This document shows positions 48,901 to 54,900 of a DNA stretch of 64,000 bases, piece by piece. Location: assembly GCA_037379345.1 (NCBI GenBank), contig CM074514.1, positions 6,944,001 to 7,008,000 on the forward strand. Reading direction: 5' to 3'. The notes under the pieces are model-generated. The model had not been told where the DNA came from. It worked only from the letters and a program-made list of their open reading frames with translations, and did no database searches. Made by a program: the position numbers and the translations under genes. Each line of letters begins with the position of its first letter. Position 1 is the stretch's first letter. The DNA comes from Perna viridis. Its lineage: Eukaryota.

Positions 48901-51900
48901 CTCACACCATATATATATTAAATACAGTTATACATACTTCCTTCTTTAGTCCTACTAAAGGCTGGAGGACTCTTAGGACCTTCTCCAGCTAAGTTATAGG
49001 CCTGAACTGTTATATAATACATGGTAAAAGTAGTAAGATCCTTCAACAATGCTTCTTTCTCTCTAACAATTACTGATTGTGCTGAACTCTCATCAGCAGT
49101 AGCTAACCAGTAGAACACCTAAGTAAGATTTCAAATTAGTATGCGATTAGGCAGAATACATGCCTTAGGGTAGAGGAGACTTTTGAAATATAAATTACCT
49201 ACATCACTACAGATGCCTTTTAAGACTTACATTGGTCTCATCCTAGAATCAAAAAATATTTGAACTCTTAATACTGAAAGTTGAAGACTGGATATTGATT
49301 TTTGGGTGTTTTCTGTTGTTTTAAATTCTGGCAGCCAGAAAATAAATACATGTATTATTTAATATATGCCTTCATCATATATAAGCAAATACAATTCTTA
49401 TATTCTTGATATAGAATGATTCCATTTTTTTTTTGGTAGTGATAAAATAACTACTGAGTTGCGAACATCCTTTAGTTACAGTAAATAATTTAGCCACACT
49501 TTTTACAGTAAACAACACCATAAATAAAGCAAAAATTTTTCAGTATGAATTTTCCCTGATGGTCAAAATCCCTTAGTTGTCTTTAAAAGTTTTTTAAACT
49601 GTTACAATTGTTTATTTCCAGATTGATTTACCTTATAACCAGACAATTCTCCATTGTGTGTCTCTGGTGGTGGAGGATCCCACATTACTTTGATCTGGGT
49701 TGAATTCATGGCCTCAAATCTTATATTGACAGGAGCAGCAGAAGGAGCTAAAAACAGAATTTATTTCCTAATCCACTTTCATTTTAGAATTGTGATGCAT
49801 TGTGTAACATGTTCAATCTTCTTTCAACTGACTTAGATTTAGTAACTTTAGCATGCCATCTGAGCATAAAAATTAGTACAGAAACTAAAAATTCATAACA
49901 TGCCTTTTAATTTTAATTACACTAAAAATGATAATAAATCTTCATGAGAAGCAATATTGTTAACATTCAATACATTACAAAGAAAAGGAAAACATAACAG
50001 TAAACAGTATTCAAAAAATTACATCCAAAAACATCACAATGCAAATTCAAGTCAATGTAGAAATCACAACAATTAAAAGGATCTTTCTAAGCATTAGTTA
50101 AGATCAATTAAAAAGGAGTCAAAGGGAAGCAAAGCAACACCTAAACAACATGTAAGTTTAAAGGTGCTTTGAGGCAAATATTTCATTTAAAAAAGTTATA
50201 AATTAAAATATGCCCATTCAAGTTTAATGAGACATCAGCACTTTTAAATAAGGCACCATTCATTGTTATTGCAAAGAAATATTTCACTTACAATTTATGC
50301 AGCTAGTTCTTCTTATAAACAAAGAGCTAAGCAATAACCCACATCACAAGGGCTTGAATATTGGGAACTATGTCTGATGTCCCAATAATAGTTGGAAATA
50401 TCTTTTCAGGAAAAAAAACAGTTTGGTGACAAAATAAATGGTAATAAAATATTGAGTTAAGTTCATTTTGTCTGGGTAATTAAGGGGAACATGAAACAAT
50501 CACTGCTTCAATTTTGGCCTAAAAGTATCATACCTGCTTCTCCAACATACACAGATGTGATAGTAGTTGGAGGCCCTTCACCGATAGAATTGAAAGCAAT
50601 AATCTTCACTTCATAATTGACATATTTGACAAGATCCCGAAGGACAAATTCCTGTGTAGGATACTGAACAGTGACCTCCTGGTAGCTGGTCATATCTGCT
50701 TTACGATACTGGATAACATACCCCACAATAGCACCATTCCAGGTAGAGGGGTCGGGATGCTAAACAACAAAGACCACAGCATAAGCATAAAAGTTACAAC
50801 ATAAAAAAGACAGGCAGAAATCAAGGGAAAAAGACAACAATTAGTCGACAGGCATATCATAACATCTTTACATCTACTGTTCACCTGTATTCAATCTCTA
50901 ATATTGATGGTATCATGATTCAGCTTAATTTCTTTTCACATACAAATCTACAAACTTTGGTTATAAGAATTAATCAATATTTTTTACATGTCTGTTTCAA
51001 GATAGCACTTGATTTTTTTTCTACCTGATCATATTCACTAAGAGTATAAATTGAGATTGAATACAGAAGCAAACAAATTTCTATATATGCATGCACATTA
51101 TACCTTATATACATCAATATGATTGTGAAATGTTCCAGTTAAAAAAATTAAAAAAAAACATAAAAAATAATTTTCATCCCAAAATATTGACATACAAAAG
51201 CCAAATTCAAACATATACTCAATTAGTTTCTTAACTGGAACATTTTCATTCATCTGATGTACATTGAAGCTTGAGGACGTATATAGGAAGGAAAAAAAAC
51301 CCTTGACATGTAGAAAGCTACAACAATGAAAATCGGTCCTTTTATAGTACCGAGCTCAATATTTTCAACAACACTTGTACTCCATGGCCCAAATCCAAGA
51401 CTGTTCAGAGCTCGAACTCGAAACTCGTAAGTCTTGGGCTTCAAACTAGTGACGACACTGGAGTAAAGGAATGTATCAGCTTGATAAATCCATGGCCCTT
51501 CTGGGAAATACTCTCTAAAACTCATTGTGTAGTTAAGTTTGTCACTATTCCATAGTATCTTCAATGGAGCCTGCATGCATTTAATCAAACAAAAAAACAA
51601 AAAAACAATATATTTTACTATCAACTTCAAGTCTGTCTACATGTATTGATAACTCAATTTAAGCACATGCCAATTTAAATTATTCATAAAGCAAGACAGG
51701 CATTGTCATACAGAATATGAAGCATACTTCATTCAATGACTTAAATGCTGACATGCATTTTGACTCTTTTATTTATTTATCATCGTACTTCAACCTTCAT
51801 AAATTAAACTGAGATTGATAACCCAAATATACATGTAATAACTTGTTTTGGTTGAAATATCTACCTTTTGAAATATTCATTTTGCAACTTTATTTCATCT

Positions 51901-54900
51901 TTTGTTATGAATATCAATAATTGATAAAAGGCATGCATGTCAAGTTTCACTATATTCCATTCAGCAATTTATTGTGATACATGTTATAATATTTGGAGGT
52001 TTTACATCTTAAAGAGCATACATTTTCTACTTGTATATTCCCAATCAACTAATGTTTTAAAGGGAGTAATATCACATACTGCATTACACTATAGGATTGA
52101 ACAGCTATTTTCTGTCGTTCATGCATGTATGAATGACCGAAAATAGCTGCTCAATCCTTATAATTCTATCAAAGTTACCTTCTGAGAGCCTCAGTTGGTT
52201 ATATTTACATACTGTGTGTATGTTTACGCTTCAATACAGACACATTCATTTGCACATGTATGGGAGTGCGGACAAATATTTACACATAATCGGCAGCACG
52301 ACGACAGTGAAGGCGGAATGGACGAAATGATTGGCATTGAAAATACGAGATGAAAACAATTCAACACGAATGAAATTTTTAAGGAATTTCAACAAGAATG
52401 AAATTTTTAAGGAATTTCAACAAGGAAGAAGGAAAATTATAATAAGGTGTTTTCAAGGGTTCAGTCAAGACTCAGTTATAAGTTTCTTTCCCCGAGATGA
52501 AAATTACACTCTGTAAACAAACTTGACCAGTAAAATCAATGTGCATGCAATAAACTATTCTTACTGCTATATTATGCCATTCAGTTCGTTGCCTCACTCT
52601 TTCGAACTACACGACTGCCATATTGGTTTCAAGTTGACTGGCGTTCATGCATGTATGAACGATTGGCAAAGTTCATGCATGTATGAACGATTGGCGAAGT
52701 TCATGCATGCATGAACTGTCTGGCAATGACATTCTTGACCAATCAAAAACGGCTATAAGCATGAAGAATCTCGTGATTAGAATTATTCACTTATAATATT
52801 TAAAATAGACTATTTAGTTAAAGGAATAATCTTTTCAGCCAGCACAACAGGTGTTTGTAAAAATTACCATTGACTTACCTCCCATGTAACATGTATAGAA
52901 TCTGTAGTTAATGGTCTGACCTTTAAGTTCTGTGGAGCTCCCTCAGGCTCTGGAAAACACACAAAAAAATATTCATTTTAAACTGATTAACTATGCAAAT
53001 TTGTAATCCTTATTCGATAAAAAATTCAATTAAAGAACAGCATCTTACTGATTTTCATCTAACATAAGTTGATCTGATAATATCTGAGTTTGGACTCAAT
53101 CTGAGATAAGTAAATCTAGACTCAGACATTTTTTTTTTTCACTCCAATTCTAAGTAATGGAAAGAATACGCCTACTACTTTTGTCAATTGGGAGATGATC
53201 AAATTTTCTTCAGAATTCTCTTTCCATTTATTAGTTTTGTGATGGGAGAAATCTATTCTCCTCCAACTAGGTCATTGTTCAGAATATTCCTCAACTCTTG
53301 TCAGTTAATTTTTACATTTCTCAATCATGCTCACATATTGAAAATATAATTGTATTTACTAGGGTGGAAAAATAATTTAGACCACCCTAATTTGAGGGAG
53401 AATCCATACCTATACTTATTGCAGATAGGTTCACAATAGCTTTCTTATAATTTCAGGTGTTCAAAAAAGAAGCACATCCAACTACAAGTCACAGAACTAC
53501 AATGTTTAATGTGAGACTTACTATCTTGCCTAGTTCTGATCTCATCTGAAGGGTCACTGAAATTACTGCTGCCAATATCATTGGTGGCAGCCACACGGAA
53601 ATTATAACGAGTGTTTGGATGTAACCTGTAAAACAGACAAATATATAAAATTAATGATATAAAAAAAAAGTTGATATCATTTATAACTGTTATAAAAAAA
53701 AATTTGTAAAATTTCGTCCCAATTTTACTATACAGGATGTCATACTATCTTTCATGTGTCAAATAAACCCGTTAAAATTACTTTCTACATGACAAACCCT
53801 TAATAAATATGCAACAGAAGCTGCTCCTATGTAACATATTTTTCTCTAAAAATGACATGACATTTGTGATTACATGCTTACAACCACACTCTCAAAGCTT
53901 AGTATGGGTAAAAAAGAACAGTAGATTGATAATTTCAACCACACTATTAAGTACCAGTCCACATAAAATTCAGACAATGCCACTGGTATAGTGATTCATG
54001 GTCAAGAAAAACCCACCAAACAAACGACGCTTTTTAGTCTACATTTGCTATACTTTTACATAACAGCCTGTTCTGCATTCAGATCTGCACTTTTCAGAAA
54101 ATCATATATTCATCTCCTACTAAAATCAACCAAATCAAGCCAAATCAAGAATGATAACTCTTGCTAATCTCAAAAGCGCAACAACCAAATAAAAAACTAA
54201 GACTGGTTATGTGATCAGTAACTCTTTCTTAACTAGAAATAAAATTGAATTTGGTGGGTTTCTGACATGCATGAATCACCTTCTGTCTGATTTTGACAAA
54301 GGCTACTACTTAAAGGTTAGTATGAGTAATAAAGAACAGTAGATAGATAATCTAAATCACACTCTCAAAGCTTAGTATGTGTAAAAAAAAGACCTAATAG
54401 ATAAATAATCTATTAGATAGTGTAGACAATGAAGAGGACTCTGGGTTATATCTATTATACATATATAGTTTGAAGATCCAGGAAGGGCCTTATGAACTTG
54501 GGATACATATATCATACATGTGTAGTTCGAAGATAGAGGTAGGGCCTTGGGAACAACCTACCCAGTAACAGTATAGTTAGAGGAAGACGGAGGTATTGTT
54601 TTTGGAAATTCCACCCAGTTCTGTCCCTCACTCTTGTATTCAATGGTATAGTTTCTAATTGGTCCATAACCATCATATGCTGGCTGCCAGCTGATTGTAA
54701 CATTCCTGGCCCTCACCTCAGCAGTAATCTGAGGTTTCATTGGTTTATCTGGCTTTCCTGTTAAATAAACATCACTTTTATGTTAGGAGCAAATAACATT
54801 TTAAAACTTGATTCAAAGTTGAAAGCATAAAAAATAATGTTCATTGTGTAATACTTTTCTGTTACTTTTTTATTACATGTAGATATATTCATGCAAATAT

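What the first reader, a model, noticed from the sequence alone, without database searches (positions are those of the whole stretch)
50534..52949. Duplicated, divergent exon in Sidekick FN3 #10: mutually exclusive splicing or a truncated isoform
Seen: exon 52949-52879 ends mid-domain (...HVTWE, phase 0). Two downstream exons can each complete the FN3. Exon A is 51570-51351 (220 nt; WNSDKLNY...[22 protein letters not shown]) and exon B is 50759-50534 (226 nt; WNGAIVGY...[22 protein letters not shown]...VYVGEA, the canonical Sdk sequence). Both run phase 0 to 1, so including both frameshifts. A has a weak donor (G|GTACTA), and read-through gives [33 protein letters not shown]-stop, a hydrophobic tail. 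Established: tandem mutually exclusive exons are a hallmark of arthropod Dscam; I do not know of this for Sdk. Inference: either Dscam-like exon choice or a short secreted/membrane-tethered Sdk lacking FN3 #11-13 and the PDZ motif.
Basis: partly seen in the sequence, partly recalled or inferred. Interest (0 to 1): 0.8.

Follow-up and report, generated by a model that had tools for sequence, protein, structure and literature searches.

The report
Conserved alternative exon pair in Sidekick
A Sidekick cell-adhesion gene has two alternative exons for the second half of its 10th fibronectin domain; both have been kept as protein-coding sequence in at least five lineages, but RNA reads so far show only the second exon spliced in.

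Summary
On the minus strand, exon 52949-52879 can be followed by exon A (51570-51351, 220 nt) or exon B (50759-50534, 226 nt). Both run phase 0 to 1 and both encode the C-terminal part of FN3 #10 of a Sidekick gene (13 FN3 domains, a TM helix, C-terminal GFSSFV).

RNA from four runs shows only B spliced to both neighbours. No junction into or out of A was listed. A is covered by low-depth unspliced contigs and by about three sense reads in one run.

Conservation shows that A is a real coding exon. Orthologues in four other lineages are all 220 nt, with no stop or indel. AG and G|GUAC are kept, introns are unalignable, and dN/dS is 0.04-0.13, the same as for B. Two lineages carry A and B in tandem on one contig. 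Including both exons, or skipping both, gives an early stop.

The read-through tail is not conserved (4-50 aa), and the A-B intron of the window has no poly(A) signal.

Best reading (about 0.65): an old pair of mutually exclusive exons. B is the default. A is a rarely or tissue-restrictedly used variant with a very weak donor and GCAUG clusters upstream. I found this described in no paper. It is an ordinary kind of switch in a new gene.

The parts
52879..52949 (-). Constitutive exon: first part of FN3 #10 (A and B strands, ends ...HVTWE), phase 1 to 0, strong donor GAG|GUAAGU
   Evidence: Junctions 52949>53522 and 52879>50759 in raw reads and in 9-12 kb contigs. Orthologue in L003 123-193, dN/dS 0.12.
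51571..52419 (-). Unique part of the intron upstream of exon A. It holds five GCAUG, at -8, -100, -186, -366 and -554 from the acceptor. The one at 51574-51579 (UGCAUG) abuts the 3' splice site. Candidate Rbfox-type repressor sites.
   Evidence: The same enrichment occurs upstream of A in L003 (4), L005 (3), L008 (3) and L001 (1 in 99 nt), although the introns are unalignable. It is absent from the A-B intron.
51351..51570 (-). Exon A: alternative second part of FN3 #10 (73 codons + 1 nt, phase 0 to 1). It carries a conserved N-Y-T sequon and a near-invariant stretch, residues 12-29.
   Evidence: Orthologues in L001, L003, L005-7 and L008-13 are all 220 nt with no stop. dN/dS 0.035-0.13. 49 of 73 columns are invariant. 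No splice junction seen.
51315..51350 (-). Conserved start of the A-B intron: weak donor GUACUA (51350-51345); ACCGA (51337-51333), complementary to UCGGU across the donor; GU-rich element UUGUUGUAGCUU (51326-51315)
   Evidence: GUAC is kept in all five lineages. A complement of 5 bp or more to the donor lies within +10..+36 in each lineage, with per-lineage shuffle P 0.03-0.12. Fold z-scores are not significant.
50534..50759 (-). Exon B: default second part of FN3 #10 (75 codons + 1 nt, phase 0 to 1), donor CAG|GUAUGA
   Evidence: Junctions 52879>50759 and 50534>49747 in X21 reads (3 and 5) and in X2 and X9 contigs (depth 27-30). Orthologues have dN/dS 0.03-0.13. 53 of 75 columns are invariant.
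49630..49747 (-). Next constitutive exon (start of FN3 #11), entered in phase 1
   Evidence: Junctions 50534>49747 and 49630>49116. Read in phase 0, as if both A and B were skipped, it hits a stop at codon 9.
52420..52775 (.). Dispersed repeat inside the upstream intron. It is not part of the switch. It explains the high antisense RNA depth here and five further GCAUG.
   Evidence: At least 40 near-full-length copies at 81-93% identity, and 521 candidates, in the own genome. Depth up to about 190, with loose ends.

Best explanation
Exons A and B are an old pair of mutually exclusive exons that give Sidekick two versions of the C, C', E, F and G strands of its 10th FN3 domain.

Shown:
- Both exons have the same phases and nearly the same length.
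- Both are kept under equally strong purifying selection in several deeply diverged lineages, with their splice sites.
- Neither length is a multiple of three, so including both or skipping both gives an early stop.
- B is the form present in the abundant transcripts.

Inferred:
- Exactly one exon is used per productive mRNA, and wrong combinations are removed by nonsense-mediated decay.
- B is the default because A has a very weak donor (GUACUA, no G at +5) that may also sit in a small hairpin.
- A is further held down by a factor of the Rbfox/Fox-1 type that binds the GCAUG cluster in its upstream intron. A would then be used only in particular cells or stages.
- The A form would place a different, glycosylated and highly constrained surface on FN3 #10 and leave the rest of the receptor unchanged.
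For: 1. Sequence anatomy.
2. Conservation. Exon A orthologues in L001/L002, L003, L005-7 and L008-13 are all 220 nt, without stop or indel, and keep AG| and |GUAC. dN/dS is 0.035-0.13 in all 10 pairs, with dS 1.2-2.0 in nine pairs (0.17 for the close pair L005/L008). Differences by codon position are about 12:6:32. Changes unique to the window's lineage are 8 synonymous and 5 non-synonymous, over roughly 46 synonymous and 173 non-synonymous sites.
3. Exon B shows the same constraint, 0.03-0.13. The close pair L005/L008 has 7:1 (A) and 8:1 (B) synonymous to non-synonymous changes.
4. Only the exons, plus at most 47 nt beside them, align between lineages; the introns are saturated.
5. The tandem order (upstream exon - A, then A - B) is kept on single contigs (L003; L005, L008).
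6. A followed by B gives a stop at codon 20 of B in the window and at codon 3 in L005 and L008. Skipping both gives a stop at codon 9 of the next exon.
7. In X21, the only run with good Sidekick depth and no reads over unique intron sequence, about three sense-strand reads lie on exon A and none in the flanking bins.
8. GCAUG is enriched upstream of A in every lineage with data. Upstream (U)GCAUG clusters are known to repress the first exon of mutually exclusive pairs, as in alpha-actinin NM and egl-15 5B (PMC2777236).
9. Non-3n exclusive pairs that rely on NMD, pairs as low as 18% identical, and pairs with one rarely used member are documented in C. elegans (PMC4165533).
Against: No junction 52879>51570, 51351>49747 or 51351>50759 was listed in two raw RNA runs or two contig sets. 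In X2 and X9, exon A lies in collinear unspliced contigs (51168-51722, depth 4.8-5.6). Other intron pieces have depth 2.3-3.8, and the B-form transcript has about 28. So spliced A, if present there, is rare. Masking of 51569-51616 hides the acceptor in the read tables. Joints with fewer than three reads are not listed, so X21 cannot decide. No protein fragment of 40-224 aa joining A to a neighbouring exon is in the 5.8-billion-protein collection. UGCAUG at the acceptor itself is present in only three of five lineages. A is no closer to B than to other FN3 domains of the gene (scores 60 against 58), so origin by duplication of B rests on position and phase only.
Confidence: 0.65

Rival explanations
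1. Exon A is a truncating exon. Transcripts that include it end soon after, either by read-through and polyadenylation in the A-B intron or by A+B inclusion with a stop inside B. The product would be a secreted Sidekick ectodomain (Ig1-6 plus FN3 1-10) without TM and PDZ motif.
For: A's translation would still be under selection in this case. RNA contigs run from A into the downstream intron as far as 51168. A truncated Sdk1 variant is known in vertebrates (PMC7479261), although that one lacks Ig domains.
Against: The tail after A is unconserved in length and sequence (4-50 aa). The 591-nt A-B intron of the window has no AAUAAA or AUUAAA. The same contigs also run 150 nt into the upstream intron, so they look like unspliced precursor or DNA rather than a terminal exon. 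X21 has no read in the 166-nt bin that starts 12 nt downstream of the donor (51174-51339). The donor GGUAC is conserved in five lineages despite saturated neutral sites. The stop inside B lies at different places, and such mRNAs should be NMD targets.
Confidence: 0.12
2. Exon A is conserved elsewhere but is no longer used, or almost never used, in this species: a silent relic that has not yet decayed.
For: No splice junction in four runs. Exon A depth is close to the intron background in X2 and X9.
Against: The ORF, the length and both splice sites are intact. Changes unique to this lineage are still biased to synonymous sites (8 synonymous, 5 non-synonymous). About three sense reads lie on A in X21, with none over neighbouring unique intron sequence. 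A genuinely decayed copy looks different: L021 has a stop, a lost donor and truncations.
Confidence: 0.08
3. Exon A is a 'poison' exon. Its inclusion together with B shifts the frame and sends the mRNA to NMD, which tunes the Sidekick level. The peptide itself would not matter.
For: A+B gives an early stop in every lineage tested. A has a weak, regulated-looking donor.
Against: Variation is concentrated at third codon positions and dN/dS is about 0.1, with synonymous sites saturated. The amino-acid sequence is therefore selected, not the RNA sequence. Under this reading the FN3 hallmarks and the conserved N-Y-T sequon would be pointless.
Confidence: 0.05

Closest known systems
Homologous two-exon mutually exclusive clusters whose fidelity depends on frame and NMD (29 validated clusters in C. 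elegans, PMC4165533)
   Same: Two adjacent exons of near-equal length that is not a multiple of three, with the same phases and low sequence identity (published pairs go down to 18% aa). The intervening intron is several hundred nt, and one member may be rare.
   Different: Here single inclusion of A is not yet seen in RNA. The gene (Sidekick) and the domain (FN3) are new for this kind of switch as far as my paper searches reach.
Fox-1/Rbfox-controlled exclusive pairs: egl-15 exons 5B/5A, alpha-actinin NM/SM, FGFR2 IIIb/IIIc (PMC2777236)
   Same: Multiple (U)GCAUG in the intron just upstream of the first exon of the pair, one of them next to the branch point / 3' splice-site region. The downstream exon is the one used when the first is repressed.
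   Different: Binding and dependence on an Rbfox protein are untested here. The motif that abuts the acceptor is missing in two of five lineages.
Arthropod Dscam1 exon 4, 6 and 9 clusters
   Same: Tandem alternative exons that replace half of a domain in an Ig-superfamily neuronal adhesion receptor.
   Different: Only two variants rather than arrays. They lie in a membrane-proximal FN3 domain, not in the Ig domains that set homophilic specificity. No docking/selector pairing was found; the introns are unalignable.
Known Sidekick splice variants (vertebrate Sdk1 short form lacking some Ig domains; PMC7479261)
   Same: Isoform diversity in the same gene family, of unknown significance.
   Different: That variant removes N-terminal Ig domains. 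This one would swap part of one FN3 domain and keep the full architecture.

Membership tests
Mutually exclusive homologous exon pair | Two adjacent exons with identical phases and near-equal length | tested here: met
   220 and 226 nt, both phase 0 to 1
Mutually exclusive homologous exon pair | Both encode the same part of the protein (homology) | tested here: met
   Both match the C-terminal part of Pfam fn3. They are 29% identical, and 0 of 2000 shuffles reach the score. However, A is no closer to B than to other FN3 domains.
Mutually exclusive homologous exon pair | Double inclusion and double skipping are non-productive | tested here: met
   Stops at codon 20 (window) or codon 3 (L005, L008) of B, and at codon 9 of the next exon
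Mutually exclusive homologous exon pair | Each exon is seen spliced singly to both flanking constitutive exons | tested here: inconclusive
   B: yes, in reads and contigs. A: no junction listed, only about three reads and unspliced contigs, and the acceptor is masked in the tables.
Mutually exclusive homologous exon pair | Both exons are kept as coding sequence in other species | tested here: met
   A in five lineages with dN/dS 0.035-0.13; B 0.03-0.13; tandem order kept
Sidekick (Sdk) | 13 FN3 domains, one TM helix, cytoplasmic tail ending in GFSSFV | tested here: met
   Exon-by-exon reading and Pfam. C-terminus ...PGFSSFV-stop. Definition from PMC10084454 and PMC7479261.
Sidekick (Sdk) | Six N-terminal Ig domains | not tested
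   Only the last two Ig exons lie in the window. The 5' part of the gene is beyond base 64000.
Dscam-type exon cluster | Array of many variants with docking/selector RNA pairing | tested here: not met
   Only two variants were found. No further A- or B-like exon is in the window or genome. No conserved intronic pairing partners are detectable.
Rbfox/Fox-1-regulated exon | Conserved (U)GCAUG clusters in a flanking intron | tested here: met
   3-5 GCAUG within about 560 nt upstream of A in each lineage, against 0.1-0.6 expected. There is one per intron between A and B, and none after B in L005 and L008; the window's B-next intron holds two (shuffle P 0.04).
Rbfox/Fox-1-regulated exon | Splicing changes with Rbfox level or motif mutation | not testable with these tools
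   Needs minigene or knock-down experiments

The most novel reading that the evidence does not exclude
Sidekick, so far regarded as a receptor whose specificity lies only in Ig1-4, has in this animal group an old cell-type-gated switch (GCAUG/Rbfox-type control plus an occluded weak donor). The switch exchanges one face of membrane-proximal FN3 #10 for a glycosylated, near-invariant surface. That would point to a second, isoform-specific interaction (cis partner, membrane or matrix) of the FN3 stalk.
Probability: 0.3. Interest if true: 0.55.

Novelty: new member of a known kind. Interest (0 to 1): 0.42.

Why it matters
Sidekicks are synaptic and tricellular-junction adhesion receptors. Their 13 FN3 domains have hardly any assigned function, and the significance of their splice variants is stated to be unknown (PMC7479261). 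An alternative half-domain kept under strong selection over a divergence that has saturated synonymous sites implies that FN3 #10 does something specific enough to need two versions. It also gives a simple handle (exon-specific probes, knock-outs, binding assays) to find out what. For genome annotation, it shows that a real coding exon can be missed when common RNA-seq samples contain almost only the other variant.

Tried and rejected
1. phmmer of exon A against 1.84 billion representatives was swamped by multi-FN3 proteins. Only the 72-aa fragment P0022 was specific. None of the top 150 ends in SFV, so no full-length Sidekick was available for comparison.
2. Word-indexed searches with exon A found only the fragments P0022 and P0151 (40-128 aa range) and P0022 alone (70-224 aa range). 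No spliced fragment turned up.
3. A JGI metagenome scan with an exon-A profile found nothing.
4. The ESM Atlas gave generic FN3 clusters and no help with taxonomy.
5. Consensus and single-sequence folds of the donor region have energies no better than shuffles, z -1.8 to +0.2. I keep the hairpin only as a lead.
6. I rejected the idea that A is a separate small gene, as P0022 and P0151 were called. Conservation starts at the AG, upstream of their Met, and ends at the GU.
7. I rejected an antisense gene, because the third-position variation is in the minus-strand frame.
8. The raw count of 10 GCAUG upstream of A was corrected to 5, because five lie in a dispersed repeat.
Exons were handled one by one, by reference.
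Full report
**What is in the sequence.**
On the minus strand the window holds most of a Sidekick gene. Reading the open stretches exon by exon gives two Ig exons, then 13 FN3 domains, a TM helix and a cytoplasmic tail ending in ...PGFSSFV-stop. 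That is the defining Sidekick layout and C-terminal motif (PMC10084454, PMC7479261). The first four Ig domains lie beyond the window.

The 10th FN3 domain starts in exon 52949-52879 (71 nt, phase 1 to 0, ...HVTWE, donor GAG|GUAAGU). Two exons can complete it:
- Exon A, 51570-51351: 220 nt, acceptor ...ugcaugcag|, donor UCG|GUACUA.
- Exon B, 50759-50534: 226 nt, donor CAG|GUAUGA.

Both run phase 0 to 1.

A and B are 29% identical, and no shuffle out of 2000 reaches their alignment score. Both match the C-terminal part of Pfam fn3, A weakly. A is single-copy in its 723-Mb genome. A's similarity to B (score 60) is no higher than to other FN3 domains of the gene (58), whereas B resembles other FN3 domains much more (130). 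Origin of A by duplication of B is therefore inferred from position, phase and the unusual intron position after 'TWE', not from sequence.

**RNA evidence (the runs came).**
I laid two raw, stranded RNA runs (X21, X22) and the contigs of two further runs (X2, X9) on 48850-53800.
- The B form is proven. Junctions 52879>50759 and 50534>49747 occur in 3 and 5 reads of X21 and in single spliced contigs of 9 and 12 kb (depth 27-30).
- No junction into or out of A was listed.
- In X2 and X9, A lies in collinear contigs (51168-51722 and 51168-51631; depth 5.6 and 4.8). These run about 60-150 nt into the upstream intron and 180 nt into the downstream one. They look like precursor RNA or DNA, since other intron pieces have depth 2.3-3.8.
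- X21 has good Sidekick depth and no reads at all in the bins that hold only unique intron sequence. In that run the two bins covering A hold about 325 aligned bases, roughly three reads on the gene's strand. The flanking bins hold none.
- The tool masked 51569-51616, exactly at A's acceptor, and it lists joints only from three reads up.

X21 is therefore compatible with a spliced A form at roughly a fifth of B's depth, but it cannot show it. The RNA evidence is clear for B and inconclusive for A.

**Conservation.**
A phmmer search with exon A was flooded by multi-FN3 proteins, but it gave one specific 72-aa fragment at 82% identity (P0022). The word-indexed search added P0151. Their contigs (L001/L002, L003) are genomic.
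- In L003, the upstream exon (123-193), a 500-nt intron and the exon A orthologue (695-914) lie in the same order as in the window.
- Fragments found with exon B led to contigs of two more lineages, L005-7 and L008-13. These carry both an A orthologue (74% aa) and a B orthologue (81-83%) in tandem, about 840 nt apart.

In all five lineages A is exactly 220 nt without stop or indel, preceded by AG and followed by GUAC. Pairwise dN/dS is 0.035-0.13 in all ten comparisons. dS is 1.2-2.0 in nine of them and 0.17 for the close pair L005/L008. Differences fall roughly 12:6:32 over the three codon positions. Exon B gives 0.03-0.13 and the upstream exon 0.12. In the close pair L005/L008 both exons show the same ratio of synonymous to non-synonymous changes, 7:1 for A and 8:1 for B. 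Changes unique to the window's own lineage are also biased to synonymous sites, 8 against 5, although there are nearly four times as many non-synonymous sites.

Outside the exons only 5 to 47 nt align, and the introns are saturated. 49 of A's 73 residues are invariant. These include the N-Y-T sequon, which B lacks, and the stretch from residue 12 to 29. A is therefore a translated, selected exon in the minus-strand frame. It is not a decayed duplicate, not an RNA-level 'poison' element and not an antisense gene. For contrast, contig L021 carries a truly degenerate copy. It has a fragment of B without its donor, followed by a 5'-truncated fragment of A with an in-frame TGA.

**How the two exons relate.**
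Because both lengths are 3n+1, including both puts a stop at codon 20 of B in the window and at codon 3 in L005 and L008. Skipping both puts a stop at codon 9 of the next exon. Only single inclusion keeps Sidekick's frame. This is the class of exclusive pairs whose fidelity is backed by nonsense-mediated decay. Well-documented examples have pairs down to 18% identity, intervening introns of several hundred nt, and one member that is rare (PMC4165533).

The truncated-isoform idea fares badly:
- The read-through tail is 33, 4, 7, 32 and 50 residues long in the five lineages, with nothing in common after G-T.
- The A-B intron of the window has no AAUAAA or AUUAAA.
- The donor GGUAC is conserved although neutral sites are saturated.
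- X21 has no reads in the 166-nt bin that starts 12 nt downstream of A (51174-51339).

**Why B dominates: inferred control elements.**
- A's donor matches the consensus at only 4 of 9 positions and lacks G at +5. B matches 7 and the upstream exon 8. This weakness is conserved.
- In every lineage the donor has a perfect complement of 5-6 bp 10-12 nt downstream: GGUAC..GUACC in four lineages and UCGGU..ACCGA in the window. The per-lineage shuffle probability is 0.03-0.12. The folds are no more stable than shuffles, so this is only a lead.
- A GU-rich element (UUGUUGU..AGCUU) follows at +25 to +45 in all lineages.
- Most consistent is GCAUG, which is enriched in the otherwise unalignable intron upstream of A in every lineage. 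There are five within 560 nt in the window, after removing five that lie in a dispersed repeat. L003 has four, L005 and L008 have three each, and the 99 nt available in L001 have one. Shuffles give 0.03-0.65. The A-B introns hold one each, the stretches after B in L005 and L008 hold none, and the window's B-next intron holds two (shuffle P 0.04).
- Upstream (U)GCAUG clusters bound by Fox-1/Rbfox proteins repress the first exon of exclusive pairs in alpha-actinin and in C. elegans egl-15 (PMC2777236). The same arrangement here predicts that A is silenced wherever such a factor is active. Binding was not tested, and the copy abutting the acceptor is GAAUG in two lineages.

**Comparison and novelty.**
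The switch works like an ordinary two-exon exclusive pair, not like the Dscam arrays. It has two variants and no detectable docking/selector pairing, and it sits in an FN3 domain near the membrane rather than in the Ig domains that carry Sidekick's homophilic specificity (PMC5045292). Full-text searches found no report of exclusive exons in any Sidekick. The family review mentions only unspecified variants and an Ig-lacking Sdk1 form of unknown significance. I therefore file it as a new member of a known kind. An earlier follow-up in this scan described a similar old alternative exon pair in TMEM135 of the same genome and called the organism a mollusc. I did not verify the taxon, and the organisms behind the related contigs are unknown to me.

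**Limits.**
Divergence times are not known. The age of the pair is given only as 'older than lineages whose synonymous sites are saturated'.

**Verdict.**
The exon-choice reading is well supported by evolution and frame logic but still lacks a junction read (confidence 0.65). The truncated, hydrophobic-tail isoform is not supported.

Noticed in passing
window 52420-52775: A 356-nt dispersed repeat sits in the intron upstream of exon A. The own genome has at least 40 near-full-length copies at 81-93% identity and 521 first-look candidates. RNA reads on it are mostly antisense to Sidekick, with depth up to about 190 and many loose ends, so they come from other copies.
   Followed up: partly
L021:518-634 and L021:1159-1305: A JGI metagenome contig from a relative holds a degenerate partial copy in reversed order. 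A 3' fragment of exon B without its donor is followed about 520 nt later by a 5'-truncated exon A fragment with an in-frame TGA. A tRNA-like SINE-looking stretch lies at about 200-300.
   Followed up: partly
window 51315-51353: Small hairpin potential that would occlude exon A's weak donor. It is present in all five lineages, with a different pairing register in the window (UCGGU/ACCGA) than in the others (GGUAC/GUACC). It is followed by a conserved GU-rich element.
   Followed up: partly
window 58526-59005: A tandem repeat inside a Sidekick intron reads as an open frame of repeated '[13 protein letters not shown]' units on the minus strand.
   Followed up: no
window 36350-37420: An array of about 98-nt tandem repeats lies downstream of the Sidekick gene. 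Each unit is open in some frame ('GIPILLQHV.RYVLVSMDPYLVTT...').
   Followed up: no
window 15863-18426: Long minus-strand open frames (141, 362 and 356 aa) look like a non-LTR retrotransposon with endonuclease and reverse-transcriptase parts. Further reverse-transcriptase-like fragments lie at about 29500-31000.
   Followed up: no
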